From contig OZ251226.1 in assembly GCA_965240325.2 (NCBI GenBank), positions 1,550,001 to 1,614,000 of the forward strand: a stretch of 64,000 nucleotides of DNA, written 5' to 3'. Positions 6,301 to 56,956 of the stretch are shown in pieces (the first letter of the stretch is position 1; the number at the start of each line of letters is the position of its first letter). The position numbers were made by a program, and so were the translations under genes. The stretch is from Rebecca billardiae RCC1528 (taxonomy: Eukaryota; Protista; Haptophyta). The notes beneath the pieces are model-generated. The model was given only the letters and a program-made list of their open reading frames with translations. It was not told the DNA's origin and did not search any database.

Positions 6301-9300
6301 GGAGCACGAACGGAACGAAGGCGGGCGCGCCCACGGCGAGCGCAAGGAAGTTGTGCGGCCAGCACGCAAAGCAGTCGAGCGGGAAGTCCCTCGCAAAGTA
6401 TTGCCGAGCGATCCCAGCGGGGTCGTACACGGTGACCGAGTGCTGATTCACGACGGAGACGCGGAAGCGCAGCGCGATGCGCATGAGGTAGAAGATGTCT
6501 GCGACGATGCCCGTGAACAGCAGCTCTGGCGTGTGGACCGAGCGCTCCACGAAGCACACGCTGACGGGGATGATGACCGCATCCCACGCCGTGAGATACA
6601 GGAACAAGGTCTCGAACAGACCGAACGCCCTCGACTCGTGGCGGAGGATGAAGCGAGGCACATCGTGCGCGGACGTTGACGACCCACCGTCTGGCTTACC
6701 CTCAACCAGTGCAAGCAGTCGCGTTGACCGAGCTAGGCCGAGGGCTGCACCGATGCGCAGCTTTGCGCGGCTCGCCTCGTCGATGTGCTCCAGCAGCGGA
6801 GTCGCCTCCTCTGCAGCCGAGTCGCGGTCTTGGTTGTCCGTCAAGGCCTCGCGGTGTGCGTGCAGCGCTTCGACCATCCGCTGCCACGTCGGTGGCTGAT
6901 CAGCATCCTGCTGCTGCCCAACTTCGGTGAGCATGATGCCGTTGGCCTGCACGGGGCCGCCGTCGTCACTCGTGGCATCGCTGGTAGCATCGCTGTCATC
7001 GCTGTCGGGCGCCGCGCGAGCTGCGGCTTGCGGTTGAACCATCTTCACCTTCAGGTCCATGTCGAGCTTCTCGGCCGCCCACTCCTCGACGTGCGCCGGC
7101 GTGATGTCGTCCGGAATCGCGAGCGTCTGCCGCATGTGGTAGAGCAGCGCCCCAGCTTGCACCATGCCGGCGGGGTCCAGCCGCTCGCTGTCGATGTGCT
7201 GAGAGATGTGGCTTGCAAGGGCGATGCACGCGCGCGGCTCAGACAACGCACTGCCAAGCGCCTCCTTGGCCTTGTCCTCGAGCGTCAGCAGCTCCAGGCC
7301 CTGCAGGTCCTCGAGCCCACCCGCCTCGTCGTCGAGCGTGTTCTCGCGGCCACCGACCGTCAGCTGACTTACTGCGTTCGCCAGCAGCCATGATGAGACG
7401 CCGACGTAAAACTGCATCTCCGTCAAAAAGCGCGCCGAGCTCGACGCCTTCTTGAACGAAGACAGCGGGCTGCCAGAGCGAGAGCGCGAAGCTTCGGAAG
7501 AGTCCGTGTCCGAGTGCGAGCCAGCCGATTCTGAGGTCATCGTGCTCTCCGACAAGGAATCGCGCGGGGCACGCTGAGGGAAAGCTGGGTTCGACGTCTT
7601 AGGGGGAGGCGGCTCGGACGAGACGTCTGAGTCCGCGCCGTCGGAGTGCGAGATCATGGGCTCCATTGACACGGGTGGCGGCCCCGAAGCTGCAATGTCC
7701 GCGAGCATCTCGTCGTGGTGGTCCGCGTATCGGTCGGCGCCCTGCATGTCAAGAGCGCCGGCAGGCATTGTCGCGGTCGTCTCGAGCGCCTGCTTCAGCA
7801 GCTCGTCCTCCGTCTTGCCCATCTCCGCCGGCAGACGCTCCTTGCGGTGCTTCGGACCCACCTGATCCGAGCGGTGCGACACCTCCACCTCCGACGGCAG
7901 CAGCTGCAGCAGCTGACCCAGCTTCGCCAACCGCTCCTTCAGGTCGCTCCCGCCGCCAACCTCGAACTGCACGCCAAAGCACAGGCGGTACACGCCGTTC
8001 GAGTCGTGCACCGGACGCATCGACAGCAGGTTCTGGAACGTCTCGCCGTTCTTGCGGTAGTTGGTGATCTTCACGAAGCAGTCCGCGCCGCGGCGGAGCG
8101 TGTCCTGGATGATCGCCACAGACGCCGGCTCCGTGCGCGGGCCCTGCAAGAACCGGCAGTTCCGACCCTGCGCCTCGTACTTCGCAAAGCCCGTCACGCG
8201 GCAGAACTCGCGGTTCACAAACAGCATCGGGTTGCCCGGCATCGCCATGTCCGACAGCACGATGCACGCCTTGAACGTCTCCGCGAACGCGACGAACGAG
8301 TGGATGAAGCCAGCCAGGTCCTCCGGAACCTTGTACTTGTCCCAGATCAGGTCCTTGCGCTGCTTGATGCGCTGGCCCGCCACGGCAGCGTCCACGATCG
8401 CGTCGCACAACGGCGAGCGCACAAACCGAGCCAGCGCGTCGCCCGCGAGCTTCTTGCCAATCTCGGACACCTTCTCCTCCACGGCGCGCATGTCCATCGA
8501 CTTGGCCTGCGCAGAGCTCAGACCGAGGTGGCGCTCGAGCACCGTGCGCTTCCGCACGTCGCGAGACGCGCCCGCCGCCATGCTGCTCAGCTTCCGACCC
8601 TCGGACCAGAACTCGAGCTCGCTGTCCTCGTTGGACTCCTTCAGGAACGAGCGGAACGCGTCGTACGCCTGCGCGTCCTCAGTCAGACGCTCCAGGCTCG
8701 ACTCAGAGTCGAGCGTCCACTTCAGACGAGTGAACAGCGCCTGCGCCGAGCGGAACTGACGCTCCTTCGCGCCCTCGTCCACATACACCGCCTGCGCAGC
8801 AAACGTCGACGGCTGCGCAGACGCCGGCATGCGCCGCGGCAGCAGCTCGCGCAGCGCCGACAGCGCCTGCTGCTCCTCCGCCGTCTGCTCCTCCGCGCAC
8901 GACAGCACGCCCAGCGAGTACCGGTACTCGCCGTTCGTGTCCATCACCGGCGTGAGCGACAGGTCGTTCGTGAAGCGAGAGCCGTTCTTGCGGTAGTTCG
9001 TCACCTGCACGCGCAGCTCTGTCTTCTTGCGCAGCGCGCGCACCATCTTCGACACCATGTTCGGCTCCGTCCGGTCGCCCTGCAAGAAGCGGCAGTTGCG
9101 GCCCTCCACCTCGTACTTCGGGTAGCCGGTCACGCGCGTGAAGCCGCCGTTGCAGTACATCACCGTCACGCCCGGCACCGTCATGTCCGTGATCGCAACC
9201 GCGAGCGGCAGCTGATCGACGGCCGCCTTGAGCGCGCCCAGCCACGTGCCGTCGCCCACGCTCGGCACGCTGCCCGCGCTCAGCGCCTGCAGGATCTCCA

Positions 9301-12300
9301 TCGTCGGCTGCGGAAGGCTGACGCCACCGTAAGCGTCGCCTGCAACACTCATCGAGCTCACCTGATACTGCTGCTCCTGCTGCTGCGCCATGCCCATGCC
9401 CAGAGCGCCTGAAGCCATGCTCATCGACATGCGAGGCTGCATGGCTGGGGACATCGCCTGCGCGCTGGCGTAGCCGTTGCAACAACTGCCCATTGCACCC
9501 ATCACGCCAAGTGGCTGCTGCGCCATGCCCAGGCCAGGGCTCAGACCCGCGCCCATGCCCATGCCCACGCCCATGCCCATACCTGGCGCCATCGACATGC
9601 GCGAAGGCGGCGCGCCCGACGACATGCTCATCGACGCGCGCGACGCCATCGCCGGGCTCATCGACATCGGCGGCGCCATCATCGGCGCCGCCATCGTCGG
9701 CGCCATCGGCGTCTCGTCGAACGGCAGGCTGCCGCCCGAGATCTCCGCCATCATCTCGTCGTGGTGGTCCGCGTAGCGGTCGGCGCCCTGCATGTCGAGC
9801 GCGGTCGGCGGCATCGCGGCGGTCGTCTCGAGCGCCTGCTTCAGCAGCTCGTCCTCCGTCTTGCCCATCTCCGCCGGCAGACGCTCCTTGCGGTGCTTCG
9901 GGCCCACCTGATCCGAGCGGTGCGACACCTCCACCTCCGACGGCAGCAGCTGCAGCAGCTGACCCAGCTTCGCCAACCGCTCCTTCAGGTCGCTCCCGCC
10001 GCCAACCTCGAACTGCACGCCAAAGCACAGGCGGTACACGCCGTTCGAGTCGTGCACCGGACGCATCGACAGCAGGTTCTGGAACGTCTCGCCGTTCTTG
10101 CGGTAGTTGGTGATCTTCACGAAGCAGTCCGCGCCGCGGCGGAGCGTGTCCTGGATGATCGCCACAGACGCCGGCTCCGTGCGCGGGCCCTGCAAGAACC
10201 GGCAGTTCCGACCCTGCGCCTCGTACTTCGCAAAGCCCGTCACGCGGCAGAACTCGCGGTTCACAAACAGCATCGGGTTGCCCGGCATCGCCATGTCCGA
10301 CAGCACGATGCACGCCTTGAACGTCTCCGCGAACGCGACGAACGAGTGGATGAAGCCAGCCAGGTCCTCCGGAACCTTGTACTTGTCCCAGATCAGGTCC
10401 TTGCGCTGCTTGATGCGCTGGCCCGCCACGGCAGCGTCCACGATCGCGTCGCACAACGGCGAGCGCACAAACCGAGCCAGGGCGTCGCCCGCGAGCTTCT
10501 TGCCAATCTCGGACACCTTCTCCTCCACGGCGCGCATGTCCATCGACTTGGCCTGCGCAGAGCTCAGACCGAGGTGGCGCTCGAGCACCGTGCGCTTCCG
10601 CACGTCGCGAGACGCGCCCGCCGCCATGCTGCTCAGCTTCCGACCCTCGGACCAGAACTCGAGCTCGCTGTCCTCGTTGGACTCCTTCAGGAACGAGCGG
10701 AACGCGTCGTACGCCTGCGCGTCCTCAGTCAGACGCTCCAGGCTCGACTCAGAGTCGAGCGTCCACTTCAGACGAGTGAACAGCGCCTGCGCCGAGCGGA
10801 ACTGACGCTCCTTCGCGCCCTCGTCCACATACACCGCCTGCGCAGCAAACGTCGACGGCTGCGCAGACGCCGGCATGCGCCGCGGCAGCAGCTCGCGCAG
10901 CGCCGACAGCGCCTGCTGCTCCTCCGCCGTCTGCTCCTCCGCGCACGACAGCACGCCCAGCGAGTACCGGTACTCGCCGTTCGTGTCCATCACCGGCGTG
11001 AGCGACAGGTCGTTCGTGAAGCGAGAGCCGTTCTTGCGGTAGTTCGTCACCTGCACGTGCAGCTCCTTCTTCTTGCGCAGCGCGCGCACCATCTTCGACA
11101 CGATGTTCGGCTCCGTCCGGTCGCCCTGCAAGAAGCGGCAGTTGCGGCCCTCCACCTCGTACTTCGGGTAGCCGGTCACGCGCGTGAAGCCGCCGTTGCA
11201 GTACATCACCGTCACGCCCGGCACCGTCATGTCCGTGATCGCAACCGCGAGCGGCAGCTGATCGACGGCCGCCTTGAGCGCGCCCAGCCACGTGCCGTCG
11301 CCCATGCTCGGCACGCTGCCCGCGCTCAGCGCCTGCAGGATCTCCATCGTCGGCTGCGGAAGGCTGAAGCCGCCACCGCCGTCGCCCATGCCGCCCGCGC
11401 CGCCCATCGCGCTCGGCGGCTGCTGCGCCGCCATGCCCATGCCCATGCCCATGCCCGGCGCCATCGACATGCGCGAAGGCGGCGCGCCCGACGACATGCT
11501 CATCGACGCGCGCGGCGCCATCGCCGGGCTCATCGACATCGGCGCCGCCATCATCGGCGCCGCCATCGTCGGCGCCATCGGCGTCTCGTCGAACGGCAGG
11601 CTGCCGCCCGAGATCTCCGCCATCATCTCGTCGTGGTGGTCCGCGTAGCGGTCGGCGCCCTTCATGTCGAGCGCGGTCGGCGGCATCGCGGCGGTCGTCT
11701 CGAGCGCCTGCTTCAGCAGCTCGTCCTCCGTCTTGCCCATCTCCGCCGGCAGACGCTCCTTGCGGTGCTTCGGGCCCACCTGATCCGAGCGGTGCGACAC
11801 CTCCACCTCCGACGGCAGCAGCTGCAGCAGCTGACCCAGCTTCGCCAACCGCTCCTTCAGGTCGCTCCCGCCGCCAACCTCGAACTGCACGCCAAAGCAC
11901 AGGCGGTACACGCCGTTCGAGTCGTGCACCGGACGCATCGACAGCAGGTTCTGGAACGTCTCGCCGTTCTTGCGGTAGTTGGTGATCTTCACGAAGCAGT
12001 CCGCGCCGCGGCGGAGCGTGTCCTGGATGATCGCCACAGACGCCGGCTCCGTGCGCGGGCCCTGCAAGAACCGGCAGTTCCGACCCTGCGCCTCGTGCTT
12101 CGCAAAGCCCGTCACGCGGCAGAACTCGCGGTTCACAAACAGCATCGGGTTGCCCGGCATCGCCATGTCCGACAGCACGATGCACGCCTTGAACGTCTCC
12201 GCGAACGCGACGAACGAGTGGATGAAGCCAGCCAGGTCCTCCGGAACCTTGTACTTGTCCCAGATCAGGTCCTTGCGCTGCTTGATGCGCTGGCCCGCCA

Positions 12301-15300
12301 CGGCAGCGTCCACGATCGCGTCGCACAACGGCGAGCGCACAAACCGAGCCAGCGCGTCGCCCGCGAGCTTCTTGCCAATCTCGGACACCTTCTCCTCCAC
12401 GGCGCGCATGTCCATCGACTTGGCCTGCGCAGAGCTCAGACCGAGGTGGCGCTCGAGCACCGTGCGCTTCCGCACGTCGCGAGACGCGCCCGCCGCCATG
12501 CTGCTCAGCTTCCGACCCTCGGACCAGAACTCGAGCTCGCTGTCCTCGTTGGACTCCTTCAGGAACGAGCGGAACGCGTCGTACGCCTGCGCGTCCTCAG
12601 TCAGACGCTCCAGGCTCGACTCAGAGTCGAGCGTCCACTTCAGACGAGTGAACAGCGCCTGCGCCGAGCGGAACTGACGCTCCTTCGCGCCCTCGTCCAC
12701 GTGCACCACGTCCGCCGCGAACGTCGACGGCTGCGCAGACGCCGGCATGCGCCGCGGCAGCAGCTCGCGCAGCGCCGACAGCGCCTGCTGCTCCTCCGCC
12801 GTCTGCTCCTCCGCGCACGACAGCACGCCCAGCGAGTACCGGTACTCGCCGTTCGTGTCCATCACCGGCGTGAGCGACAGGTCGTTCGTGAAGCGAGAGC
12901 CGTTCTTGCGGTAGTTCGTCACCTGCACGTGCAGCTCCTTCTTCTTGCGCAGCGCGCGCACCATCTTCGACACGATGTTCGGCTCCGTCCGGTCGCCCTG
13001 CAAGAAGCGGCAGTTGCGGCCCTCCACCTCGTACTTCGGGTAGCCGGTCACGCGCGTGAAGCCGCCGTTGCAGTACATCACCGTCACGCCCGGCACCGTC
13101 ATGTCCGTGATCGCAACCGCGAGCGGCAGCTGATCGACGGCCGCCTTGAGCGCGCCCAGCCACGTGCCGTCGCCCACGCTCGGCACGCTGCCCGCGCTCA
13201 GCGCCTGCAGGATCTCCATCGTCGGCTGCGGAAGGCTGAAGCCGCCACCGCCGTCGCCCATGCCGCCCGCGCCGCCCATCGCACTCGGCGGCTGCTGCGC
13301 CGCCATGCCCATGCCCATGCCCATGCCCGGCGCCATCGACATGCGCGGCGCCATCGACATGCGCGAAGGCGGCGCGCCCGACGACATGCTCATCGACGCG
13401 CGCGGCGCCATCGCCGGGCTCATCGACATTGGCGGCGCCATCATCGGCGCCGCCATCGTCGGCGCCATCGGCGTCTCGTCGAACGGCAGGCTGCCGCCCG
13501 AGATCTCCGCCATCATCTCGTCGTGGTGGTCCGCGTAGCGGTCGGCGCCCTGCATGTCGAGCGCGGTCGGCGGCATCGCGGCGGTCGTCTCGAGCGCCTG
13601 CTTCAGCAGCTCGTCCTCCGTCTTGCCCATCTCCGCCGGCAGACGCTCCTTGCGGTGCTTCGGGCCCACCTGATCCGAGCGGTGCGACACCTCCACCTCC
13701 GACGGCAGCAGCTGCAGCAGCTGACCCAGCTTCGCCAACCGCTCCTTCAGGTCGCTCCCGCCGCCAACCTCGAACTGCACGCCAAAGCACAGGCGGTACA
13801 CGCCGTTCGAGTCGTGCACCGGACGCATCGACAGCAGGTTCTGGAACGTCTCGCCGTTCTTGCGGTAGTTGGTGATCTTCACGAAGCAGTCCGCGCCGCG
13901 GCGGAGCGTGTCCTGGATGATCGCCACAGACGCCGGCTCCGTGCGCGGGCCCTGCAAGAACCGGCAGTTCCGACCCTGCGCCTCGTGCTTCGCAAAGCCC
14001 GTCACGCGGCAGAACTCGCGGTTCACAAACAGCATCGGGTTGCCCGGCATCGCCATGTCCGACAGCACGATGCACGCCTTGAACGTCTCCGCGAACGCGA
14101 CGAACGAGTGGATGAAGCCAGCCAGGTCCTCCGGAACCTTGTACTTGTCCCAGATCAGGTCCTTGCGCTGCTTGATGCGCTGGCCCGCCACGGCAGCGTC
14201 CACGATCGCGTCGCACAACGGCGAGCGCACAAACCGAGCCAGCGCGTCGCCCGCGAGCTTCTTGCCAATCTCGGACACCTTCTCCTCCACGGCGCGCATG
14301 TCCATCGACTTGGCCTGCGCAGAGCTCAGACCGAGGTGGCGCTCGAGCACCGTGCGCTTCCGCACGTCGCGAGACGCGCCCGCCGCCATGCTGCTCAGCT
14401 TCCGACCCTCGGACCAGAACTCGAGCTCGCTGTCCTCGTTGGACTCCTTCAGGAACGAGCGGAACGCGTCGTACGCCTGCGCGTCCTCAGTCAGACGCTC
14501 CAGGCTCGACTCAGAGTCGAGCGTCCACTTCAGACGAGTGAAGAGCGCCTGCGCCGAGCGGAACTGACGCTCCTTCGCGCCCTCGTCCACGTGCACCACG
14601 TCCGCCGCGAACGTCGACGGCTGCGCAGACGCCGGCATGCGCCGCGGCAGCAGCTCGCGCAGCGCCGACAGCGCCTGCTGCTCCTCCGCCGTCTGCTCCT
14701 CCGCGCACGACAGCACGCCCAGCGAGTACCGGTACTCGCCGTTCGTGTCCATCACCGGCGTGAGCGACAGGTCGTTCGTGAAGCGAGAGCCGTTCTTGCG
14801 GTAGTTCGTCACCTGCACGTGCAGCTCCTTCTTCTTGCGCAGCGCGCGCACCATCTTCGACACGATGTTCGGCTCCGTCCGGTCGCCCTGCAAGAAGCGG
14901 CAGTTGCGGCCCTCCACCTCGTACTTCGGGTAGCCGGTCACGCGCGTGAAGCCGCCGTTGCAGTACATCACCGTCACGCCCGGCACCGTCATGTCCGTGA
15001 TCGCAACCGCGAGCGGCAGCTGATCGACGGCCGCCTTGAGCGCGCCCAGCCACGTGCCGTCGCCCACGCTCGGCACGCTGCCCGCGCTCAGCGCCTGCAG
15101 GATCTCCATCGTCGGCTGCGGAAGGCTGAAGCCGCCACCGCCGTCGCCCATGCCGCCCGCGCCGCCCATCGCGCTCGGCGGCTGCTGCGCCGCCATGCCC
15201 ATGCCCATGCCCATGCCCGGCGCCATCGACATGCGCGGCGCCATCGACATGCGCGAAGGTGGCGCGCTCGACGACATGCTCATCGACGCGCGCGGCGCCA

Positions 15301-33300: not shown

Positions 33301-36300
33301 ACGAGCGGAACGCGTCGTACGCCTGCGCGTCCTCAGTCAGACGCTCCAGGCTCGACTCAGAGTCGAGCGTCCACTTCAGACGAGTGAACAGCGCCTGCGC
33401 CGAGCGGAACTGACGCTCCTTCGCGCCCTCGTCCACGTGCACCACGTCCGCCGCGAACGTCGACGGCTGCGCAGACGCCGGCATGCGCCGCGGCAGCAGC
33501 TCGCGCAGCGCCGACAGCGCCTGCTGCTCCTCAGCCGTCTGCTCCTCCGCGCACGACAGCACGCCCAGCGAGTACCGGTACTCGCCGTTCGTGTCCATCA
33601 CCGGCGTGAGCGACAGGTCGTTCGTGAAGCGAGAGCCGTTCTTGCGGTAGTTCGTCACCTGCACGTGCAGCTCCTTCTTCTTGCGCAGCGCGCGCACCAT
33701 CTTCGACACGATGTTCGGCTCCGTCCGGTCGCCCTGCAAGAAGCGGCAGTTGCGGCCCTCTACCTCGTACTTCGGGTAGCCGGTCACGCGCATGAAGCCG
33801 CCGTTGCAGTACATCACCGTCACGCCCGGCACCGTCATGTCCGTGATCGCAACCGCGAGCGGCAGCTGATCGACGGCCGCCTTGAGCGCGCCCAGCCACG
33901 TGCCGTCGCCCACGCTCGGCATCGTGCCGCTGCCCTCGCCCGCCGCCCGCAGCGCCTGCAGAATGTCTGTCGACGCGAGGGGAAGCGTTGTCGCGGTCTC
34001 ATCGGCCACACCGGAAGTGCTCACGCCAGCCGTATCCCTCGAATCTGCCCCGGCATACATGCCGGGCTGGGGCCACGGCGATGAGTCGAGCCCGTGCGCC
34101 GGCGACTCAGGCAAAAATCCCACAACGCTGTCGAGCGAAGGCTGTTCATCCTCCATCACGTACGAGGGCTCGTCCGGATAGCTTGGTAACTCCGCGATAT
34201 ACTCGAGCATCTCGTCGTGGTGGTCCGCGTAACGGTCGGCGCCCTGCATGTCGAGCGCGGTCGGCGGGATCGTCGCAGTCGTCTCGAGCGCCTGCTTCAG
34301 CAGCTCGTCCTCCGTCTTGCCGAAGTCACTGCTCGACACCTCCTTGCGGTGCTTCGGACCCACCCGCTGCGATGAGTGGTGCACGTCGATCTCGGACGGG
34401 AGCAGCTGCAGCAGCTGACCCAGCTTCGCCAACCGCTCCTTCAGGTCGCTCCCGCCGCCAACCTCGAACTGCACGCCAAAGCACAGGCGGTACACGCCGT
34501 TCGAGTCGTGCACCGGACGCATCGACAGCAGGTTCTGGAACGTCTCGCCGTTCTTGCGGTAGTTGGTGATCTTCACAAAGCAGTCCGCGCCGCGGCGGAG
34601 CGTGTCCTGGATGATCGCCACAGACGCCGGCTCCGTGCGCGGGCCCTGCAAGAACCGGCAGTTCCGACCCTGCGCCTCGCGCTTCGCAAAGCCGGTCACG
34701 CGGCAGAACTCGCGGTTCACAAACAGCATCGGGTTGCCCGGCATCGCCATGTCCGACAGCACGATGCACGCCTTGAACGTCTCCGCGAACGCGACGAACG
34801 AGTGGATGAAGCCAGCCAGGTCCTCCGGCACCTTGTACTTGTCCCAGATCAGCTCCTTGCGCTGCTTGATGCGCTGGCCCGCCACAGCCGCGTCCACGAT
34901 CGGCTCGCACGCCGATGATCTGACAAAGTCGGGCAAGACCTCGTTGGCCAGCTTCGAGCCGATCTCTGCTGCTCGGCGCTGCACGCTCGCGAAATCGAGG
35001 AACTTCGCCTGCTCCGCGCTCAAGCCGAGGTACTTCTCGCAGATCGTGCGCTTCAGCACGTCGCGAGACGCGCCCGCCATCGTCGAAAGCCGGCGCGCCT
35101 CAACCCAAAACTCGAGCTCGTTCGCATCGCCGCCCGTGTCGCGCACGAACGCACGAAGCGCGCTCAATGCGCTGGTGTCGCCTACCAGACGCTCAAGGCT
35201 CTTCTCTGACTCGAGAGTCCACTGCAGCCGAGTGAACAGCGCTTGCGCCGAGCGGAACTGCCTGTCCTTCGCCTCGTCGTCTACCGCTGCTTCGCGCACG
35301 AAGCTCAGCGGCTGCGCAGACGCCGGCATGCGCCGCGGCAGCAGCTCGCGCAGCGCCGACAGCGCCTGCTGCTCCTCCGCCGTCTGCTCCTCCGCGCACG
35401 ACAGCACGCCCAGCGAGTACCGGTACTCGCCGTTCGTGTCCATCACCGGCGTGAGCGACAGGTCGTTCGTGAAGCGAGAGCCGTTCTTGCGGTAGTTCGT
35501 CACCTGCACGTGCAGCTCCTTCTTCTTGCGCAGCGCGCGCACCATCTTCGACACGATGTTCGGCTCCGTCCGGTCGCCCTGCAAGAAGCGGCAGTTGCGG
35601 CCCTCCACCTCGTACTTCGGGTAGCCGGTCACGCGCGTGAAGCCATCGTTGCAGTACATCACCGTCACGCCCGGCACCGTCATGTCCGTGATCGCAACCG
35701 CGAGCGGCAGCGGCTCGACGGCCGCCTTGAGCGCGCCCAGCCACGTGCCGTCGCCCACACTCGGCATCGTGCCGCTGCCCTCGCCCGCCTCGCTCAGTGC
35801 CTGCAGAATGTCCGTCGTGTCCAGTGGCAACAACGGCTCGAAGGTCTCGTCCTCGGGCCCGTGCTCGAGAGCAAGGGCGGCCACCTCCTCGAGCATCTCG
35901 TCGTGGTGGTCCGCGTAACGGTCGGCGCCCTGCATGTCGAGCGCGGTCGGCGGGATCGCGGCGGTCGTCTCGAGCGCCTGCTTCAGCAGCTCGTCCTCCG
36001 TCTTGCCGAAGTCACTGCTCGACACCTCCTTGCGGTGCTTCGGACCCACCCGCTGCGATGAGTGGTGCACGTCGATCTCGGACGGGAGCAGCTGCAGCAG
36101 CTGACCCAGCTTCGCCAACCGCTCCTTCAGGTCGCTCCCGCCGCCAACCTCGAACTGCACGCCAAAGCACAGGCGGTACACGCCGTTCGAGTCGTGCACC
36201 GGACGCATCGACAGCAGGTTCTGGAACGTCTCGCCGTTCTTGCGGTAGTTGGTGATCTTCACGAAGCAGTCCGCGCCGCGGCGGAGCGTGTCCTGGATGA

Positions 36301-39300
36301 TCGCCACAGATGCGGGCTCCGTGCGCGGGCCCTGCAAGAACCGGCAGTTCCGACCCTGCGCCTCGCGCTTCGCAAAGCCGGTCACGCGGCAGAACTCGCG
36401 GTTCACAAACAGCATCGGGTTGCCCGGCATCGCCATGTCCGACAGCACGATGCACGCCTTGAACGTCTCCGCGAACGCGACGAACGAGTGGATGAAGCCA
36501 GCCAGGTCCTCCGGCACCTTGTACTTGTCCCAGATCAGCTCCTTGCGCTGCTTGATGCGCTGGCCCGCCACAGCCGCGTCCACGATCGGCTCGCACGCCG
36601 ATGATCTGACAAAGTCGGGCAAGACCTCGTTGGCCAGCTTCGAGCCGATCTCTGCTGCTCGGCGCTGCACGCTCGCGAAGTCGATCGACTTCGCCTGCAC
36701 CGCGCTCAAGCCGATGTACTTCTCGCAGATCGTGCGCTTCAGCACGTCGCGAGATGCTCCCGCACCCATGCTCGACAACTTGCGCGCCTCAACCCAAAAC
36801 TCGAGCTCGTTCGCGTTGCCGCCCATGTCGCGCATGTACGCACGAAGCGCGCTCGACGCGCGGGAGTCACCCACCAGACGCTCCAGGCTCGACTCAGAGT
36901 CAAGCGTCCACTTCAGACGAGTGAACAGCGCCTGCGCCGAGCGGAACTGCCTGTCCTTCGCCTCGTCGTCCACCGCTGCTTCGCGCGCGAAGCTCAGCGG
37001 CTGCGCAGACGCCGGCATGCGCCGCGGCAGCAGCTCGCGCAGCGCCGACAGCGCCTGCTGCTCCTCCGCCGTCTGCTCCTCCGCGCACGACAGCACGCCC
37101 AGCGAGTACCGGTACTCGCCGTTCGTGTCCATCACCGGCGTGAGCGACAGGTCGTTCGTGAAGCGAGAGCCGTTCTTGCGGTAGTTCGTCACCTGCACGT
37201 GCAGCTCCTTCTTCTTGCGCAGCGCGCGCACCATCTTCGACACGATGTTCGGCTCCGTCCGGTCGCCCTGCAAGAAGCGGCAGTTCCGGCCCTCCACCTC
37301 GTACTTCGGGTAGCCGGTCACGCGCGTGAAGCCGCCGTTGCAGTACATCACCGTCACGCCCGGCACCGTCATGTCCGTGATCGCAACCGCGAGCGGCAGC
37401 TGATCGACGGCCGCCTTGAGCGCGCCCAGCCACGTGCCTTCGCCCACGCTCGGCATCGTGCCGCTGCCCTCGCCCGCCGCGCTCAGAGCACGAAGTATCT
37501 CCGTCGTCGTCTGAGGAAGGGGCCCTGCCAACGGCAATGCGCTCGACTCCAACCGCCGCGCGTGCGGCTTCTCCTCGTCCGCCAGCGCAATCACGTCGGT
37601 CAGGTCAGCGCTCGCAAATAATGGCACCTCGTCGTCGTGCGAGGCGGATGAGGGCTGACGAGGCGGCCACTGGTCTGATGGTTGGCGCGGGCGCGCGACG
37701 GAGGCGGCACTTGCCCCAAAAAGCTCAGGCTGTGCAGGCAAGCCGTTGAGATCCGACAGCATCTCGTCGTGATGATCGGCGAAGCGCTCGGAGCCCTGCA
37801 TGTCCTGTGCACCATCTGGCATGAGCGCGACCTGCTTGAGAGCAGCCTGCAAAGACTCCACCTCCGTCTTGCCCGTCTCCTCTGGCAACCGCTCCTTGCG
37901 ATGCCTTGGACCCACCCGCTCCGATGCGTGCTGCACCTGCACCTCCGACGGCAGCAGCTGCAGCAGCTGACCCAGCTTCGCCAACCGCTCCTTCAGGTCG
38001 CTCCCGCCGCCAACCTCGAACTGCACGCCAAAGCACAGGCGGTACACGCCGTTCGAGTCGTGCACCGGACGCATCGACAGCAGGTTCTGGAACGTCTCGC
38101 CGTTCTTGCGGTAGTTGGTGATCTTCACGAAGCAGTCCGCGCCGCGGCGGAGCGTGTCCTGGATGATCGCCACAGACGCCGGTTCCGTGCGCGGGCCCTG
38201 CAAGAAGCGGCAGTTCCGACCCTGCGCCTCGTGCTTCGCAAAGCCCGTCACGCGGCAGAACTCGCGGTTCACAAACAGCATCGGGTTGCCCGGCATCGCC
38301 ATGTCCGACAGCACGATGCACGCCGGGAACGTCTCCGCGAATGCGACGAACGAGTGGATGAAGCCAGACAGGTCATCCGGCACCTTGTACTTGTCCCAGA
38401 TCAGCTCCTTGCGCTGCTTGATGCGCTGGCTGCCGACAGCAGCCTCGACGAGGGGCGCGCATGCTGCCGAGCGGACAAAGCGAGGCACGCAGTCGAAGGC
38501 CAACCGTCCTCGGACCTCGGCGACCTTGCTCTCGATGGCGTCCATGTCCATCGCCTTCGCCTGCGCGCTCGTCATCTTGAGGTACTTCTCGCAGATCTTG
38601 CGCTTGTGCGCGTCGCGCGAGCCGCCCTTCATGTTGGCCAGCTTGCGCGACTCGATCCAGAACTCGAGCTCGCTGTCCTCGCCGGTCTGCTTAAGGAACG
38701 AGCGGAACGCGACGAGGGACGCGGCGTCGTCGGTCAAGCGCGTCAGCGTGGACTCCTCCTTGAGCGTCCACTGCAGCTTGGTGAAGAGCAGCTGCGCGTC
38801 GCGGAACTGCCTGTCCTTCGCCTCGTCGTCCACCGCTGCTTCGCGCGCGAAGCTCAGCGGCTGCGCAGACGCCGGCATGCGCCGCGGCAGCAGCTCGCGC
38901 AGCGCCGCCAGCGCCTGCTGCTCCCCCGCCGTCTGCAGCTCGAGGCACGACAGCACGCCCAACGAGTACCGGTACTCGCCGTTCGTGTCCATCACCGGCG
39001 TGAGCGACAGGTCGTTCGTGAAGCGAGAGCCGTCCTTGCGGTAGTTCGTCACCTGCACGTGCAGCTCCTTCTTCTTGCGCAGCGCGCGCACCATCTTCGA
39101 CACGATGTTCGGCTCCGTCCGGTCGCCCTGCAAGAAGCGGCAGTTCCGGCCCTCCACCTCGTACTTCGGGTAGCCGGTCACGCGCGTGAAGCCGCCGTTG
39201 CAGTACATCACCGTCACGCCCGGCACCGTCATGTCCGTGATCGCAACCGCGAGCGGCAGCTGATCGACGGCCGCCTTGAGCACGCCCAGCCACGTGCCGT

Positions 39301-42300
39301 CGCCAACACTTGGCATTGTGGCCCGCCCATCCGCGGTGGCCGTCAACGCGCGTAGGATGCCCGCGGTCGCCTCCGGCAGCTGAAAGTTGATGTTCTCCTG
39401 GCCCGGTGCAGGTGCGTGCATGATGCGGCTCGGGTTCAACCCACTGATCTCCTCGAGCATCTCGTCGTGGTGGTCCGCGAAACGGTCGGCGCCGTGCATG
39501 TCGAGCGCGGTCGGCGGGATCGTCGCAGTCGTCTCGAGCGCCTGCTTCAGCAGCTCGTCCTCCGTCTTGCCCATCTCCGCCGGCAGACGCTCCTTGCGGT
39601 GCTTTGGCCCGACCCGCTCCGATGCGTGCTGCACCTGCACCTCCGACGGCAGCAGCTGCAGCAGCTGACCCAGCTTCGCCAACCGCTCCTTCAGGTCGCT
39701 CCCGCCGCCAACCTCGAACTGCACGCCAAAGCACAGGCGGTACACGCCGTTCGAGTCGTGCACCGGACGCATCGACAGCAGGTTCTGGAACGTCTCGCCG
39801 TTCTTGCGGTAGTTGGTGATCTTCACAAAGCAGTCTGCGCCGCGGCGGAGCGTGTCCTGGATGATCGCCACAGACGCCGGCTCCGTGCGCGGGCCCTGCA
39901 AGAACCGGCAGTTCCGACCCTGCGCCTCGTGCTTCGCAAAGCCCGTCACGCGGCAGAACTCGCGGTTCACAAACAGCATCGGGTTGCCCGGCATCGCCAT
40001 GTCCGACAGCACGATGCACGCCTTGAACGTCTCCGCGAACGCGACGAACGAGTGGATGAAGCCCGACAGGTCCTCCGGCACCTTGTACTTGTCCCAGATC
40101 AGCTCCTTGCGCTGCTTGATGCGCTGGCTGCCGACAGCAGCCTCGACGAGGGGCGCGCATGCTGCCGAGCGGACAAAGCGAGGCACGCAGTCGACAGCCA
40201 ACCGTCCTCGGACCTCGGCGACCTTGCTCTCGATGGCGTCCATGTCCATCGCCTTCGCCTGCGCGCTCGTCATCTTGAGGTACTTCTCGCAGATCTTGCG
40301 CTTGTGCGCGTCGCGCGAGCCGCCCTTCATGTTGGCCAGCTTGCGCGACTCGATCCAGAACTCGAGCTCGTTGTCCTCGCCGGTCTCCTTGAGGAACGAG
40401 CGGAACGCGGCGAGAGACGCAGCGTCGTCGGCCAAGCGCGCAAGTGTCGCATCGGCGTCGAGCGTCCACTGCAGCTTGGTGAAGAGCAGCTGCGCGTCGC
40501 GGAACTGCCTGTCCTTCGCCTCGTCGTCCACCGCTGCTTCGCGCGCGAAGCTCAGCGGCTGCGCAGACGCCGGCATGCGCCGCGGCAGCAGCTCGCGCAG
40601 CGCCGCCAGCGCCTTCTGCTCCCCCGCCGTCTGCAGCTCGAGGCACGACAGCACGCCCAACGAGTACCGGTACTCGCCGTTCGTGTCCATCACCGGCGTG
40701 AGCGACAGGTCGTTCGTGAAGCGAGAGCCGTCCTTGCGGTAGTTCGTCACCTGCACGTGCAGCTCCTTCTTCTTGCGCAGCGCGCGCACCATCTTCGACA
40801 CCATGTTCGGCTCCGTCCGGTCGCCCTGCAAGAAGCGGCAGTTCCGGCCCTCCGTGTCGTACTTTGGGTAGCCCGTCACGCGCGTGAAGCCGCCGTTGCA
40901 GTACATCACCGTCACGCCCGGCACCGTCATGTCCGTGATCGCAACCGCGAGCGGCAGCTGATCGACCGCCACCTTGAGCGCGCCGAGCCACGTGCCGTCG
41001 CCAACACTTGGCATTGTGGCCCGCCCATCCGCGGCGGCCGTCAACGCCCGTAGGATGCCCGTGGTCGCCTCCGGCAGCTGAAAGTCGATGTCCTCTCCCC
41101 GTGCAACTGCGTGGACGATGCGGCTCGGGTTCAACCCACTGATCTCCTCGAGCATCTCGTCGTGGTGGTCCGCGAAACGGTCGGCGCCGTGCATGTCGAG
41201 CGCGGTCGGCGGGATCGTCGCAGTCGTCTCGAGCGCCTGCTTCAGCAGCTCGTCCTCCGTCTTGCCCATCTCCGCCGGCAGACGCTCCTTGCGGTGCTTT
41301 GGCCCGACCCGCTCCGATGCGTGCTGCACCTGCACCTCCGACGGCAGCAGCTGCAGCAGCTGACCCAGCTTCGCCAACCGCTCCTTCAGGTCGCTCCCGC
41401 CGCCAACCTCGAACTGCACGCCAAAGCACAGGCGGTACACGCCGTTCGAGTCGTGCACCGGACGCATCGACAGCAGGTTCTGGAACGTCTCGCCGTTCTT
41501 GCGGTAGTTGGTGATCTTCACGAAGCAGTCCGCGCCGCGGCGGAGCGTGTCATGGATGATCGCCACAGACGCCGGCTCCGTGCGCGGGCCCTGCAAGAAG
41601 CGGCAGTTCCGACCCTGCGCCTCGTGCTTCGCAAAGCCCGTCACGCGGCAGAACTCGCGGTTCACAAACAGCATCGGGTTGCCCGGCATCGCCATGTCCG
41701 ACAGCACGATGCACGCCTTGAACGTCTCCGCGAACGCGACGAACGAGTGGATGAAGCCAGCCAGGTCCTCCGGAACCTTGTACTTGTCCCAGATCAGCTC
41801 CTTGCGCTGCTTGATGCGCTGGCTGCCGACAGCAGCCTCGACGAGGGGCGCGCATGCTGCCGAGCGGACAAAGCGAGGAACACAGTCGAAGGCCAACCGT
41901 CCTCGGACCTCGGCGACCTTGCTCTCGATGGCGTCCATGTCCATCGCCTTCGCCTGCGCGCTCGTCATCTTGAGGTACTTCTCGCAGATCTTGCGCTTGT
42001 GCGCGTCGCGCGAGCCGCCCTTCATGTTGGCCAGCTTGCGCGACTCGATCCAGAACTCGAGCTCGTTGTCCTCGCCGGTCTCCTTGAGGAACGAGCGGAA
42101 CGCGGCGAGAGACGCAGCGTCGTCGGCCAAGCGCGGGAGTGTCGCCTCCGTGTCGAGCGTCCACTGCAGCTTGGTGAAGAGCAACTGCGCGTCGCGGAAC
42201 TGCCTGTCCTTCGCCTCGTCGTCCACCGCTGCTTCGTGCGCGAAGCTCAGCGGCTGCGCCGACGCCGGCATGCATCGCGGCAGCAGCTGCCGCAGCGCCG

Positions 42301-45113
42301 ACAGCGCCTGCTGCTCCTCCGCCGTCTGCTCCTCCGCGCACGACAGCACGCCCAGCGAGTACCGGTACTCGCCGTTCGTGTCCATCACCGGCGTGAGCGA
42401 CAGGTCGTTTGTGAAGCGAGAGCCGTCCTTGCGGTAGTTCGTCACCTGCACGTGCAGCTCTGTCTTCCTGCGCAGCGCGCGGACCATCTGCGAGACGATG
42501 TTTGGCTCCGTCTGCTCGCCCTGCAAGAAGCGGCAGTTGCGGCCCTCGACCTCGAACTTGGCGTAGCCCGTCAGCCGCGCGAAGGCGTCGTTGCAGTACA
42601 TCACCTTCACGCCGGGCACGGTCATGTCCGTGATCGCCACCGCGATGGACAGCGGCTCGACCGCCGCCTTGAGCGCGCCGAGCCAGGTGCCGTCGCCCGC
42701 CTTGGCGGGCATCGAGCCGCGGCCCTCGCCCGCCCCGCACATCGCCTTCAAGGTGTCCACCGTCTGCTGCGGCAGGTGCTCGCGCGCCACGTCGCTTTGC
42801 TCATTGCCCGCCGAGGACTCGTCGTCATCGCGCTCGAAAGACGCGGCCATGTTGGTCGCCGCCATCACCTTGGTCGCCTCCTTGAGGTGCGTGCGCAGCG
42901 ACTCGAGCTCCTCGCTGCCCACCTCCGTCTGCAGCTGCCTCACGTCGCTCAGCCGGATCGCGCCGCGCTTCTTGGCGTCGAACACCTTGTGCAGGTTGGA
43001 CAGCACGAATGCCGTGTCGGCGAGGGCCTCGCGCATCCCCGAGAGGCTCCCCTTGGCGCTCGCGCTGGAGATGCTGCTCTTCGCGGTCCGCGCCGCGAGC
43101 AGGTTGACGAAGCGCTTCGAGCAGAAGAGCACGACGCAGCCGAGGTCGGAGATGAAGAAGGGCGCCGTCGACTCGGACGATGGCTGGATGTTCGTCATGC
43201 CGGCGAGCGCGTTGAGCGAGGCGGCGAGGATGCTCTGCGGGGCGGGCTGGGTCGAGCCGCGGCGGGCGAACGAGGCACCGTTGCTCGGCGCGATGCTGCC
43301 GCGCGCGCCCGCGCCTGCCTCACCGCCGGCTGCCTGCCCCTGCGTGCTGCCCCGCCGGCGCGGCGCCCCGCCGGCCAAGTGCTGGGTGACCGCAAAGAGC
43401 GAGCTGCCCTGGATGGAGCCGGAGCGGAGGAAGCGGCGGATGGCGAAGTCGCCGGTCGGCATGGGCGTGTCGTGCGGCGACGGGCTCGGCCGCCGTGGCG
43501 CGTTCGCGCCGGCGAATGATTTGAGTCCCGTGTAGATCTCGTCCATCACCGCGTTGGCGTCCACGTAGTCCAGGCCGACGTCGCGGAGCAGGATGTCCTC
43601 GAGCGCGAGCGCCTCCTGCCGCAGCCGCTCGTTGACGGGCAGCGAGTCGCGCGCCTCGGGCGAGAGCCGCTTGAGGAAGAGGTCGCGGAGCATCGAGATG
43701 CCCTCTTCCGCGCGCGGCATGCGGAGGATCGTGCGCACGAACAGCTTGGTCGCCTGCTCGGTGTCGTCATCATTCGCGTCGTGGCCGGAGCGGTCGGCGC
43801 CATCGTCGCTGTCCGAGCCCTCCGACTGGTCGGAGGCATCCTCGTACGAGTCGAGGTCGGACTGGCTGCCGCTGTCCGAGCCGCCCGCGTCCTTCGAGTA
43901 GTTGGCGATCCAGCTGTCCGTCGCCTTGTCCAGCATCCGCGCCAGGATCTTGGACGCCCTGGTGAACCTGTTCACGTCCTTGCTGAGCGACTTGAGGCTG
44001 ACGGTGATCGGCTGCCGCAGCGCCTGCTTGGTCTCGCGCAGCGCCATCCGCTTCTCGCCGTGCACCTTGAGCTTGCGGTCGATGCGGTACAGGTTGACCG
44101 TCTTGGCCTGGTCGAACGCCTCGCACAGCTCCTCGTCCTCGGCGTACCCATCGGGCAGGTGCGCTCCGCACATCTGCACGACCAGCGCGGCCGTGTCGAG
44201 GTTGCTCTCGAGCGCGGGCACGAGCGGCGACGCGCCCCAGCGGTCGAGCGCCATCACGTCCGCGCGCGCGGCGATGAGCACGGCTGCGGCGGAGATGGCG
44301 CCCGTCGACGCGACGCGGTGGAAGGCGGTGCGCCCGTCGTAGTCCGACGCGTCCACCTCCACGCCCATGTCGACGAGGAAGCGCAGGAAGTTGATGTCGG
44401 ACGTGGTGGCCGCGTGGAGCAGGGCCTTCTCCATGCGCACCGGGTCCGCGCGCGAGTTGGCCTCGGCGAGCATGCGCGCGACGTGGAGGTGCTGGTTCTG
44501 GATGGCGTCGTCGATCGGCTTGCGCCCGCGCTTGTCCTCCGCGTTCACGTCCGCGAGGTGCGACATCAGGTGCTCGACGACGCGCACGTTGCCCTCCGCC
44601 GCGGCGATGTGCAGCGCGGTGCGGTCGTCGTAGTTCTTTGCCTGCACGTCGATGCCGTACGCGAGGATCATCGACATGTACGTGAGGTCGCCGTCACTCG
44701 CCGCCTTGTGCATCCACGCGGCGGGGTGCTCGACGTCGATCTCCGCGCCGAAGCTGCTCAGCACGCTCGCCACGTTGTCGTGCCGGCTGTCGATCGCATC
44801 GCGCATCGGCGTGCAGCCCCAGCGGTCCTTGGCGTTGACGTCGGCGCCGAGCTCGCACAGCAGCTGCACCACCTTGAAGCTGCCGTCGGCGGCGGCGAGG
44901 TGCATCGTCGTGCGCGAGTCGTAGCCCGACATGTTCAGGTCGAAGCCGCGGTCGGCGAGCGTGCGCACGGTCTCCACGTCGCCCTGCATCGCCGCCGCCG
45001 ACATCTGCGCGAACGCCGCCTGGTTGCGCTCGATGATGGTCTGGCGGATCTTCTCCTTGAGCTCCTCCGCCTCCTCGTCCGCGTTCTTGGAGTCCTCCGC
45101 GTCCGCGCTGGCC

Positions 45114-45190
<77 letters not shown>

Positions 45191-48618: not shown

Positions 48619-50002
<1,384 letters not shown>

Positions 50003-50307
50003 CGGGTGATCGATCGGCCTGCCGCCGAACGGAGCGACCGATGTGACGAAACAGCACGTGCCAAAGCGGCAAAGCCCGTTGCTCTTGAAAGACCGGATGG
50101 AGGATGGACGTCCGCGTTGGTTCGCGCGCCCATGTCGCCCGGTCTTTTTTGGAAGCGCATCGATCATTTCTGCGTCACTGTCTTTCCGGCCGCTCGTCAA
50201 GTCGTCAGTCATTTCAAAATGCAAGTCCCCCATACTGCCAAGCGGGAGGAAGCGCGTGGCTATCTCGATCACCGCGGCCGGCGACTCACTGGCCGAGCGG
50301 GCGCGCA

Positions 50308-55132: not shown

Positions 55133-55368
55133 CTCGGCGAGCGCCCGCGCCTCCGGCGCGCGTCGGCGGCCCCGCGACGCCAGGGCTCAAAGCAATGCAA
55201 GACCTTCAACCTGATACGCCGGCCATTGCTTTGATTTCATCAGTCATCATCACAGCAGACTTTTCACATTGTAAAGTTATCTCGCCTGCCTGAGCTGTGT
55301 GCGTCTCTTATTCTTAGTAAACTGTAGTATCACTTTTGGCCAAATTTGGCCGCGGTCAGCTTCCCAAG

Positions 55369-56652: not shown

Positions 56653-56956
56653 AGGCCGAGTGAATGCGCGTGGCTACCAGTACCAGCGGCACCCGCCTTG
56701 GCCGACCTGCTTGAGTCGTAGCTTACCGTACTGTGGAACCGGTGTCGGCAGCAGCGGGAAGGTAGACGAGTCAATGATGATGAGTGATGACTTCAGACAG
56801 TCACAGTTCAGCGTTCAGAGTTCAGACTGACTTGGGCACTGTCTTGGCTGCCGGGAATCTCCTTGTCACGTAACTCGTAAGACAGTCTCCGAATCTCACC
56901 ATGGCCGCCGCGACAGCGTGACGTCCTTGTGGCAAGGCAAGCGAGGGCAAGGCGCC

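What the first reader, a model, noticed from the sequence alone, without database searches (positions are those of the whole stretch)
7700..42780. Helmchrome-like RGS/LOV array expanded 19-fold, a possible photon-collecting polymer
Seen: read cyclically, the array is RGS-LOV-LOV repeated. Known: RGS-LOV-LOV twice over is the architecture of helmchrome, a candidate phototaxis receptor from heterokont flagella; phototropins carry two LOV domains. Inference: 38 flavin sites per chain (76 in a dimer) would raise the absorption cross-section or build a dense flavin body tethered to the membrane by the channel, like a paraflagellar swelling.
Basis: partly seen in the sequence, partly recalled or inferred. 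Interest (0 to 1): 0.85.

Follow-up and report, generated by a model that had tools for sequence, protein, structure and literature searches.

The report
Giant two-channel protein carrying 38 LOV domains
A haptophyte-type alga has one roughly 44-kb gene for a 14,518-residue protein in which 19 tandem blue-light-sensor units (38 flavin-type LOV domains, 19 RGS-like domains) sit in the string joining two potassium-channel-like halves, making it a strong but untested candidate for a natural flavin-based light-regulated channel.

Summary
On the minus strand there are exactly 38 LOV cores, all with the adduct cysteine, and 19 RGS-like domains, ordered LOV-A–RGS–LOV-B ×19 (window 7,709–42,691).

The full gene runs 3,312–47,291 and has five exons and four short GT–AG introns. 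It predicts a 14,518-aa (1.59 MDa) protein: [channel 1 with a GYG pore–CNBD–ankyrin]–array–[channel 2 with a degenerate pore–CNBD–ankyrin].

The channel backbone also exists without any LOV or RGS domain, as roughly 2,650-aa proteins in Diacronema lutheri and in a complete MMETSP transcript. The array is therefore an insertion into the linker between the two channels.

"Helmchrome-like" is supported. LOV-B is 55–66% identical to the post-RGS LOV of stramenopile RGS-LOV-LOV proteins, against 32–38% to phototropin LOVs. All RGS-linked LOVs form one clade.

Fourteen units are 97–99.9% identical, so the amplification is recent. No reads were available to confirm the copy number.

"Photon-collecting polymer" is untested. 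LOV domains are independent switches, not an energy-funnelling antenna.

The scan has already noted sister loci in this same genome (s1-343699, s1-352975, s1-348438). In the searchable literature I found only a passing mention of a LOV–K+ channel fusion in a Pavlova strain.

The parts
3312..47291 (-). Whole predicted coding region (ATG to stop): 5 exons, 14,518 aa, 1.59 MDa
   Evidence: Spliced model built from the ORF, in-frame GC3 of 0.85-1.0, GT..AG introns, and collinearity with P0002 and P0270
45825..47291 (-). Exon 1: low-complexity N-terminus plus the channel-1 membrane domain. S1 lies near 46670 and the pore signature TSMGYG near 46060-46076.
   Evidence: Translation. PDB matches to KCNH1, SKOR and AKT1, E 5e-9. 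Positions.
45713..45824 (-). Intron 1 (112 nt, GT..AG); it restores the frame between FEFQ and HHKSS
5224..45712 (-). Exon 2, 40,489 nt without a stop
45281..45547 (-). Channel-1 cyclic-nucleotide-binding-homology domain
   Evidence: Pfam cNMP_binding, E 8.7e-10
44129..45010 (-). Channel-1 ankyrin repeats
   Evidence: Pfam Ank_2, E 6.6e-33
42692..44128 (-). Pre-array linker, homologous to the inter-channel linker of the LOV-less relatives
   Evidence: blastp to P0265, P0267 and P0270; GC3 0.92-0.98
33905..42691 (-). Old units U1-U5 (LOV-A - RGS - LOV-B), 80-95% identical in DNA to one another and to the young block
7709..33904 (-). Young units U6-U19, 97-99.9% identical in DNA, with Met/Pro/Gly-rich 170-228 aa linkers
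6635..7708 (-). Post-array linker, homologous to the segment before channel 2 in P0002, P0264 and P0267
5879..6619 (-). Channel-2 membrane domain (Ion_trans), with an Arg-rich S4 and a degenerate pore TSLGLT near 6001
   Evidence: Pfam Ion_trans, E 8.8e-10. PDB best match GORK, E 2.2e-25, where the filter aligns to TVGYGD.
5291..5581 (-). Channel-2 cyclic-nucleotide-binding-homology domain
   Evidence: Pfam cNMP_binding, E 5.5e-4, 20.3 bits, below the curated cutoff of 27.5; aligned with the GORK CNBHD
5117..5223 (-). Intron 2 (107 nt, GT..AG, phase 1)
3822..5116 (-). Exon 3: channel-2 ankyrin repeats (about 4139-4910) and a coiled tail
   Evidence: Translation; tblastn with P0002, 49% identity
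3312..3727 (-). Exon 4 (3566-3727), intron 4 (3456-3565) and exon 5 with the stop codon (3312-3455). Intron 3 lies at 3728-3821.
   Evidence: collinear with the C-terminus of P0002

Best explanation
Shown: this is one giant gene. Its backbone is a conserved haptophyte protein with two channel subunits of the CNBD family (relatives of plant Shaker GORK/SKOR/AKT1, KCNH and HCN) in one chain. Each subunit has a C-linker, a CNB-homology domain and ankyrin repeats, and the two are joined by a cytoplasmic linker. Channel 1 keeps a K+-type TSMGYG filter; channel 2 has TSLGLT. A helmchrome-type LOV-RGS-LOV module lies in that linker and has been amplified in tandem to 19 units. Five are older diverged units and 14 are near-identical, amplified by recent unequal crossing-over. 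Gene conversion keeps the LOV segments uniform across the whole array.

Inferred: each of the 38 LOV domains binds FMN and forms the cysteinyl adduct in blue light. Because the array is the physical tether between the two pore-forming halves and sits next to their cytoplasmic gating domains, light-driven changes in the units alter the gating or clustering of the channel itself. By analogy with other LOV proteins, these changes would be undocking of flanking helices, possibly exposing the basic PKHRK stretch after LOV-B. The protein would then be a flavin-based blue-light receptor wired directly to an ion channel. Two chains would supply four pore domains and 76 LOVs.

The many LOVs would work as independent switches whose captures add up, giving more photon hits per channel or a graded response. 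They would not work as an antenna that funnels energy.
For: - One reading frame with GC3 of 0.85-1.0 runs across both junctions, and four clean GT..AG introns complete the gene.
- Channels 1 and 2 are paralogous over 830 aa. PDB matches are to GORK, hERG, HCN1, SKOR and AKT1.
- The LOV-less backbone occurs as a complete MMETSP transcript (P0270, 2647 aa), as Diacronema lutheri P0271 (2687 aa), and as P0272, P0273, P0267 and P0265. It is collinear with channel 1, the pre-array linker, the post-array linker and channel 2.
- Transcript contig P0002/L002 from a relative joins LOV-RGS-LOV units to the channel-2 orthologue in one mRNA.
- All 38 LOVs keep the adduct Cys and the flavin contacts.
- The LOV fold is confirmed: TM 0.8-0.96 and rmsd 0.7-3 A to solved LOV domains.
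- dN/dS is 0.05-0.37 in the LOVs.
- Relatives carry 1, 2 or up to 13 LOVs.
Against: - There is no expression, protein or photochemical evidence of any kind. No sequencing runs could be listed.
- The copy number rests on the assembly alone.
- No transcript from a relative shows the channel-1-to-array junction; two metagenome scans found none.
- LOV-A lacks the Ibeta Gln that normally relays the signal.
- The young units are so alike that selection on them cannot be measured.
- The channel-2 filter is degenerate and the CNBDs look atypical, so ion selectivity and gating mode are unknown.
- Coupling of the array to gating is inferred from position only.
Confidence: 0.55

Rival explanations
1. The array is mainly a photon-collecting mass: a dense, flavin-rich body like the paraflagellar swelling of brown-algal or Euglena flagella. 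The channel serves chiefly as its membrane anchor.
For: - There are 38 intact-looking flavin sites per chain.
- Helmchrome, the nearest described relative, concentrates in the flagellar swelling (PMC5795050 and PMC8017926, citing Fu et al. 2014).
- The Met/Pro/Gly-rich low-complexity linkers of the young units could drive condensation.
- Scan notes report other giant arrays in this genome.
Against: - LOV domains do not pass excitation to one another; each adduct is local (established LOV photochemistry).
- Two complete channel modules with gating domains are more than an anchor needs, and the backbone is conserved without the array.
- No localisation data exist.
Confidence: 0.2
2. The array acts through its RGS domains. 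It would be a light-regulated GTPase-activating scaffold for a Galpha subunit, recruited to the membrane as in fungal BcLOV4, with the channels only placing it at the membrane.
For: - The RGS profile of the family matches solved RGS5, RGS16, RGS10 and RGS4 structures, E 1e-9 to 1e-7.
- BcLOV4, an RGS-LOV protein, binds anionic lipids in blue light through a polybasic helix after the LOV domain (PMC6099885).
- A basic PKHRK stretch follows LOV-B.
Against: - Pfam RGS scores in the window are only 18-34 bits and cover about the first two thirds of the model.
- dN/dS is 0.5-0.7 in the RGS region against 0.05-0.37 in the LOVs, and the RGS region is not homogenised by gene conversion.
- The RGS5 segment that carries the conserved Galpha-contacting Asn falls in a 16-residue gap of the algal family.
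Confidence: 0.1
3. The 19-fold number carries little biological meaning. It could be an assembly inflation of a near-identical repeat, or a very recent, neutral and unstable runaway amplification that varies between strains.
For: - U6-U19 are 97-99.9% identical.
- No reads were available.
- Assemblies of relatives break or collapse in the same arrays: L001 ends inside one, and L002 has an N gap and two protein-identical units.
Against: - All 14 young units are distinct, and neighbouring units share variant blocks.
- The 40.5-kb frame is intact.
- The five older units show that the array was already multi-unit before the recent burst.
- Relatives with 10-13 LOVs exist.
- Scan notes report other loci with 13-34 LOVs in this genome (not checked by me).
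Confidence: 0.15

Closest known systems
HELMCHROME (stramenopile flagellar RGS-LOV-LOV x2 protein; Fu et al. 2014/2016, as cited in PMC8017926 and PMC5795050) and the 'helmchrome-like' LOV/RGS transcripts of Pavlovophyceae and Prymnesiophyceae (PMC8017926)
   Same: The same two domain kinds occur in the same cyclic order. LOV-B is 55-66% identical to the post-RGS LOV of stramenopile RGS-LOV-LOV proteins, and RGS-linked LOVs form one clade.
   Different: There are 19 units instead of two (or one). The units are embedded in a membrane channel chain rather than in a soluble flagellar protein. LOV-A carries Leu at the Ibeta Gln site. The RGS is degenerate. The lineage is haptophyte. No brown-algal HELMCHROME sequence was in hand for a direct comparison.
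Plant Shaker-type and KCNH/HCN channels of the CNBD family (GORK, SKOR, AKT1, hERG, HCN1)
   Same: Six-helix Ion_trans domain, C-linker, CNB-homology domain and ankyrin repeats in the GORK/SKOR/AKT1 order. Channel 1 has a TxGYG filter.
   Different: Two such subunits sit in one chain. The second has a TSLGLT filter. An 11,600-aa photoreceptor array lies between them.
LOV-less two-module channel proteins of haptophytes (Diacronema lutheri KFE25_003141 = P0271; MMETSP transcript P0270; P0272, P0273, P0267, P0265)
   Same: Collinear backbone of channel 1-CNBD-Ank-linker-channel 2-CNBD-Ank-tail, at 33-46% identity.
   Different: They have no LOV or RGS (HMM search negative). The window protein is about 5.5 times longer.
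BcLOV4 (fungal RGS-LOV-DUF; PMC6099885) and the synthetic LOV2-Kcv channel BLINK1 (from my own knowledge)
   Same: RGS is paired with LOV. In BLINK1, LOV is joined to a K+ channel to make it respond to light.
   Different: BcLOV4 has one LOV, no channel, and a different domain order. BLINK1 is engineered. Here the fusion is natural and massively repeated. Homology to BcLOV4 was not tested.
'LOV-voltage-dependent potassium channel' listed from Pavlova sp. RCC6257 (bioRxiv 10.1101/2025.06.20.660589)
   Same: A LOV-channel fusion in a Pavlovales alga, noted by bioinformatics only.
   Different: That preprint's main text has no occurrence of 'RGS' or 'tandem' and does not describe a repeat array or a second channel module. 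Its LOV is said to carry an R-to-Q change that is absent here. Identity with this gene family is not established.

Membership tests
LOV photoreceptor domain | PAS fold with a flavin pocket | tested here: met
   Pfam PAS_9, E 1e-42. AF2 unit model pLDDT 89.4. Foldseek TM 0.8-0.96 and rmsd 0.7-3 A to solved LOV domains.
LOV photoreceptor domain | GxNCRFLQ motif with the adduct-forming Cys, plus the flavin-contacting R, Q, N, R, N | tested here: met
   The motif is present in 38 of 38 domains. The contact residues are identical to phototropin in all 12 sampled domains.
LOV photoreceptor domain | Ibeta glutamine that relays the adduct signal | tested here: inconclusive
   Gln is present in all 19 LOV-B. 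Leu replaces it in all 19 LOV-A, as in the Pavlovales relatives.
LOV photoreceptor domain | FMN binding and a blue-light photocycle | not testable with these tools
   Needs recombinant protein and spectroscopy.
Helmchrome | RGS and paired LOV domains in the RGS-LOV-LOV repeat order | tested here: met
   The order is cyclically identical. Stramenopile relatives map as R-L-L-R-L-L.
Helmchrome | LOV domains cluster with helmchrome-type LOVs rather than with phototropin or other LOVs | tested here: met
   Clade of RGS-linked LOVs, SH-aLRT 95. LOV-B is 55-66% identical to the stramenopile post-RGS LOV against 32-38% to phototropin. Aureochrome, fungal RGS-LOV and the brown-algal type sequence were not in the tree.
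Helmchrome | Soluble flagellar protein of stramenopiles concentrated in the posterior-flagellum swelling | tested here: not met
   Here the module is internal to a chain with two Ion_trans domains in a haptophyte-type genome. Localisation cannot be tested.
RGS (GTPase-activating) domain | RGS helical-bundle homology | tested here: met
   The family profile matches RGS5 at E 9.8e-10 over nearly the whole domain. The model has eight helices at residues 166-298. Pfam scores in the window are only 18-34 bits.
RGS (GTPase-activating) domain | Galpha-contacting Asn loop between helices 5 and 6 | tested here: not met
   The RGS5 segment that carries it aligns to a 16-residue gap in the algal family profile.
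CNBD-family K+ channel (plant Shaker / KCNH type) | Ion_trans domain, C-linker and CNB-homology domain, with ankyrin repeats as in AKT1, GORK and SKOR | tested here: met
   Both modules have them.
CNBD-family K+ channel (plant Shaker / KCNH type) | TxGYG selectivity filter | tested here: inconclusive
   Channel 1 has TSMGYG. Channel 2 has TSLGLT aligned to the TVGYGD of GORK.

The most novel reading that the evidence does not exclude
This is a natural flavin-gated ion channel. Two chains would form a four-pore-domain channel whose 76 LOV switches sum blue-light captures to open or close a K+-type pore. It would be the long-sought blue-light receptor current of haptophyte swimming behaviour, and a template for LOV-based channel optogenetics whose sensitivity is set by unit number.
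Probability: 0.3. Interest if true: 0.95.

Novelty: new variant of a known kind. Interest (0 to 1): 0.8.

Why it matters
All proven light-gated channels in nature are rhodopsins. LOV-controlled channels exist only as engineered tools.

Here a helmchrome-type LOV module, a family still without a demonstrated output, is wired covalently between the two halves of a channel. That suggests an output which can be tested directly by electrophysiology.

The unit series in nature (1, 2, 10-13 and 38 LOVs) offers a built-in experiment on whether multiplying chromophores raises sensitivity.

The protein would also be among the largest predicted from any protist. It shows how tandem amplification and gene conversion can build a 1.6-MDa sensor within a conserved scaffold.

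Tried and rejected
- Tandem Repeats Finder found nothing because its longest period is 500 and the unit is about 1,890 nt. I segmented the units by motif instead.
- Both searches for sequencing runs listed none, so read laying was never used.
- Two metagenome scans for the channel-1-to-array junction found no close relative.
- The contig of P0264 is not on record.
- The Coesel et al. supplement is not held, so I could not map their helmchrome accessions.
- P0217, P0025 and P0045 (LOV with Ank or CNBD) were checked as possible junction evidence. They are not clear orthologues of the junction.
- I considered that the ORF might be two or three genes read through. I rejected this because in-frame GC3 stays at 0.73-0.98 across both junctions and because LOV-less relatives carry both channels in one ORF or transcript.
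- I considered an energy-transfer antenna and set it aside on established LOV photochemistry.
- Aureochrome, BcLOV4 and brown-algal HELMCHROME sequences could not be obtained as tool-delivered sequences, so they are missing from the tree.


Full report
**1. Observation**

The window is about 68% G+C. Its minus strand holds one uninterrupted ORF, 5057..45808, of 13,583 codons. It contains 38 NCRFLQ LOV cores and 19 ELEFW RGS cores in strict LOV–RGS–LOV order, with a period of 563–682 aa. Pfam confirms PAS_9 (E 1e-42), RGS, ankyrin, cNMP_binding and Ion_trans. The 19 units run from U1 at 40,997–42,691 to U19 at 7,709–9,250.

**2. Age structure of the array**

- U6–U19 are 97–99.9% identical in DNA. 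U1–U5 are 80–95% identical to each other and to the young block.
- All 14 young units differ from one another. Adjacent units share variant blocks and an 18-nt indel. That pattern fits a resolved tandem array growing by local unequal exchange.
- Divergence is uneven along the unit. Between old and young units, dS is 0.01–0.06 in LOV-B and 0.01–0.2 in LOV-A, but 0.4–0.9 in the RGS and the linkers. Gene conversion therefore homogenises the LOV segments across the whole array, while the RGS drifts (dN/dS 0.5–0.7).
- The young units have 170–228 aa linkers with 14% Met, 12% Pro and 12% Gly. The old units have shorter linkers that are not Met-rich.
- No public sequencing runs could be listed for the locus. 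The copy number therefore rests on the assembly.

**3. True extent of the gene**

In-frame third-position G+C is 0.85–1.0 over nearly all of the ORF. It dips to 0.73–0.86 in the post-array linker but stays coding-like.

Coding signal continues in another frame on both sides of the ORF. Four short GT..AG introns connect the frames, at 45,713–45,824, 5,117–5,223, 3,728–3,821 and 3,456–3,565.

The spliced model starts at the ATG at 47,291 and ends at the stop at 3,312. It gives 14,518 aa and 1.59 MDa.

- Exon 1 encodes a six-helix channel domain with a TSMGYG filter.
- Exon 2 continues with a C-linker, a CNB-homology domain and ankyrin repeats, then a 515-aa linker, then the array, then a 409-aa linker. 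It ends with a second Ion_trans domain (pore TSLGLT, Arg-rich S4) and a CNB-homology domain.
- Exons 3–5 add ankyrin repeats and a coiled tail.

The two channel modules are paralogous over 830 aa at 23% identity. Both match the CNBD-channel clade, including GORK, SKOR, AKT1, hERG and HCN1.

The neighbouring genes are ordinary: an ornithine carbamoyltransferase, a G-patch protein and an EamA transporter.

**4. Relatives**

*The LOV–RGS–LOV unit.*
- A full HMMER scan of 1.84 billion representative proteins found 291 proteins at E<1e-30.
- Many have one LOV–RGS–LOV unit and some have two. P0001 (4,197 aa) has 13 LOVs. P0004 (3,055 aa) has a RhoGEF plus 10 LOVs. None in the list approaches 38.
- Named relatives are Pavlovales sp. 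CCMP2436 (58%), Prymnesium, Aureococcus, other pelagophytes, Tribonema and Chromulina.
- The CCMP2436 contig ends inside such an array.

*The array-to-channel junction.* P0002 is a transcript contig from a relative, 67% identical. It joins at least two protein-identical units to the orthologue of channel 2, its CNBD, its ankyrin repeats and its tail.

*The backbone without the array.*
- P0270 (a complete MMETSP transcript, 2,647 aa), P0271 (Diacronema lutheri, 2,687 aa), P0272, P0273, P0267 and P0265 carry the backbone with no LOV or RGS.
- They are collinear with channel 1, the pre-array linker, the post-array linker and channel 2.
- In P0267 the homologues of the pre- and post-array segments lie about 40 aa apart.

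The array is therefore an insertion into the inter-module linker of a conserved two-module channel. This also settles that the ORF is one gene, not two or three genes read through.

**5. The domains**

- *LOV.* All sampled LOVs keep the adduct Cys and the flavin contacts. LOV-A has Leu where LOV-B has the Ibeta Gln, in all 19 pairs. The Pavlovales relatives show the same alternation, as do several environmental arrays.
- *Unit structure.* The AF2 model of one unit is confident (pLDDT 89.4, pTM 0.70). It shows LOV with a C-terminal helix, then an eight-helix bundle, then LOV with flanking helices. The LOV parts superpose on solved LOV domains at rmsd 0.7–3 Å.
- *RGS.* The family profile matches RGS5 at E 9.8e-10. 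In the window, Pfam scores are only 18–34 bits. The RGS5 segment bearing the Gα-contacting Asn falls in a gap of the family profile.

**6. Helmchrome question**

In a tree of 101 LOV domains, all RGS-linked LOVs (haptophyte and stramenopile) form one clade with SH-aLRT 95. Phototropin LOV1, phototropin LOV2 and histidine-kinase LOVs fall outside it. LOV-A groups with the pre-RGS LOVs of Pavlovales, and LOV-B with the post-RGS LOVs.

LOV-B is 55–66% identical to the post-RGS LOV of stramenopile RGS-LOV-LOV proteins. It is 32–38% identical to phototropin LOVs and about 38–39% identical to solved aureochrome LOV domains (Foldseek).

The module is therefore helmchrome-type. The protein is not a helmchrome, because it is a membrane channel chain in a haptophyte-type alga. 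Aureochromes, BcLOV4 and the brown-algal type sequence could not be put in the tree.

**7. Mechanism**

Shown: the architecture, the intact photochemical residues, the conserved backbone, and the amplification with gene conversion.

Inferred: FMN binding and a photocycle; that the array, as the tether between the two pore-forming halves and beside their C-linker/CNBD/ankyrin gating parts, modulates the gating or clustering of its own channel; and that two chains make a four-pore-domain channel with 76 LOVs.

A rough estimate, using values from my own memory (ε450 about 12,500 M⁻¹cm⁻¹, so σ about 4.8e-17 cm² per flavin):
- At 1 µmol photons m⁻² s⁻¹, one LOV absorbs about 0.003 photons per second.
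- A chain of 38 LOVs absorbs about 0.11 per second.

Multiplicity could therefore matter in dim light, but only if the independent switches sum. LOV domains do not funnel energy, so "photon-collecting polymer" is at best a loose metaphor. A flavin-dense body remains possible and untested.

**8. Prior knowledge**

- Helmchrome and haptophyte "helmchrome-like" LOV/RGS transcripts are described (PMC8017926).
- RGS-LOV membrane recruitment is shown for fungal BcLOV4 (PMC6099885).
- A 2025 preprint lists a LOV–voltage-dependent K+ channel from Pavlova sp. RCC6257 without further anatomy.
- I found no paper describing the repeat array, the two-module backbone or their union.
- Within this scan, sister loci in the same genome were already noted: s1-343699, s1-352975 and s1-348438, plus a stand-alone unit, s1-365420. 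I reached the two-module reading on this locus before seeing those notes.

**9. Verdict**

The feature is real. It is a new variant of known kinds (a helmchrome-type module and a CNBD channel) and of high interest. The function is untested, and the copy number still needs long-read confirmation.

Noticed in passing
window 7709-33904 (inter-unit linkers of U6-U19): The linkers of the 14 young units are 170-228 aa with 14% Met, 12% Pro and 12% Gly. The old units have 109-168 aa linkers with 2-4% Met. A Met-rich low-complexity string beside 38 flavin sites might act as a sink for reactive oxygen or drive condensation.
   Followed up: partly
window 7709-42691: Between old and young units, synonymous divergence is 0.01-0.2 in the LOV segments but 0.4-0.9 in the RGS and linkers. 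Gene conversion homogenises the LOVs across the whole array and spares the RGS.
   Followed up: yes
P0270, P0271 (Diacronema lutheri KFE25_003141), P0272, P0273, P0267 (L004), P0265 (L003): This is a family of roughly 2,650-aa single-chain proteins with two CNBD/ankyrin channel modules and no LOV. I found it described in no paper in the searchable library. The first module has a GYG filter and the second lacks it.
   Followed up: partly
P0004 (Logan, 3055 aa) and P0001 (JGI, 4197 aa): Other LOV arrays are attached to different partners. P0004 has a RhoGEF, an RGS and 10 LOVs that alternate Gln and Leu at the Ibeta site. P0001 has 13 LOVs with at least 6 RGS domains.
   Followed up: partly
L001 (Pavlovales sp. 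CCMP2436, MU631518.1, first 17 kb): The contig ends inside a LOV-RGS-LOV array that is annotated as four or five separate fragmentary genes. It is probably a broken assembly of a similar giant gene.
   Followed up: no
window 51617-55132: This 3.5-kb stretch of 76-84% G+C is open on both strands. The minus frame reads as an Ala/Glu/Arg-rich coiled-coil-like protein of 1,172 aa with no Pfam match.
   Followed up: partly
window 48596-50425 (-), 55336-56652 (+), 56918-58156 (+): The neighbouring genes are an intron-containing ornithine carbamoyltransferase, a G-patch protein and an EamA-type transporter. Nothing links them to the giant gene.
   Followed up: partly
window, after each LOV-B (for example 24974-25030): A basic PKHRK(E) stretch follows the C-terminal helix of LOV-B and is kept as PKHKKK in P0002. 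It recalls the light-exposed polybasic helix of BcLOV4.
   Followed up: no
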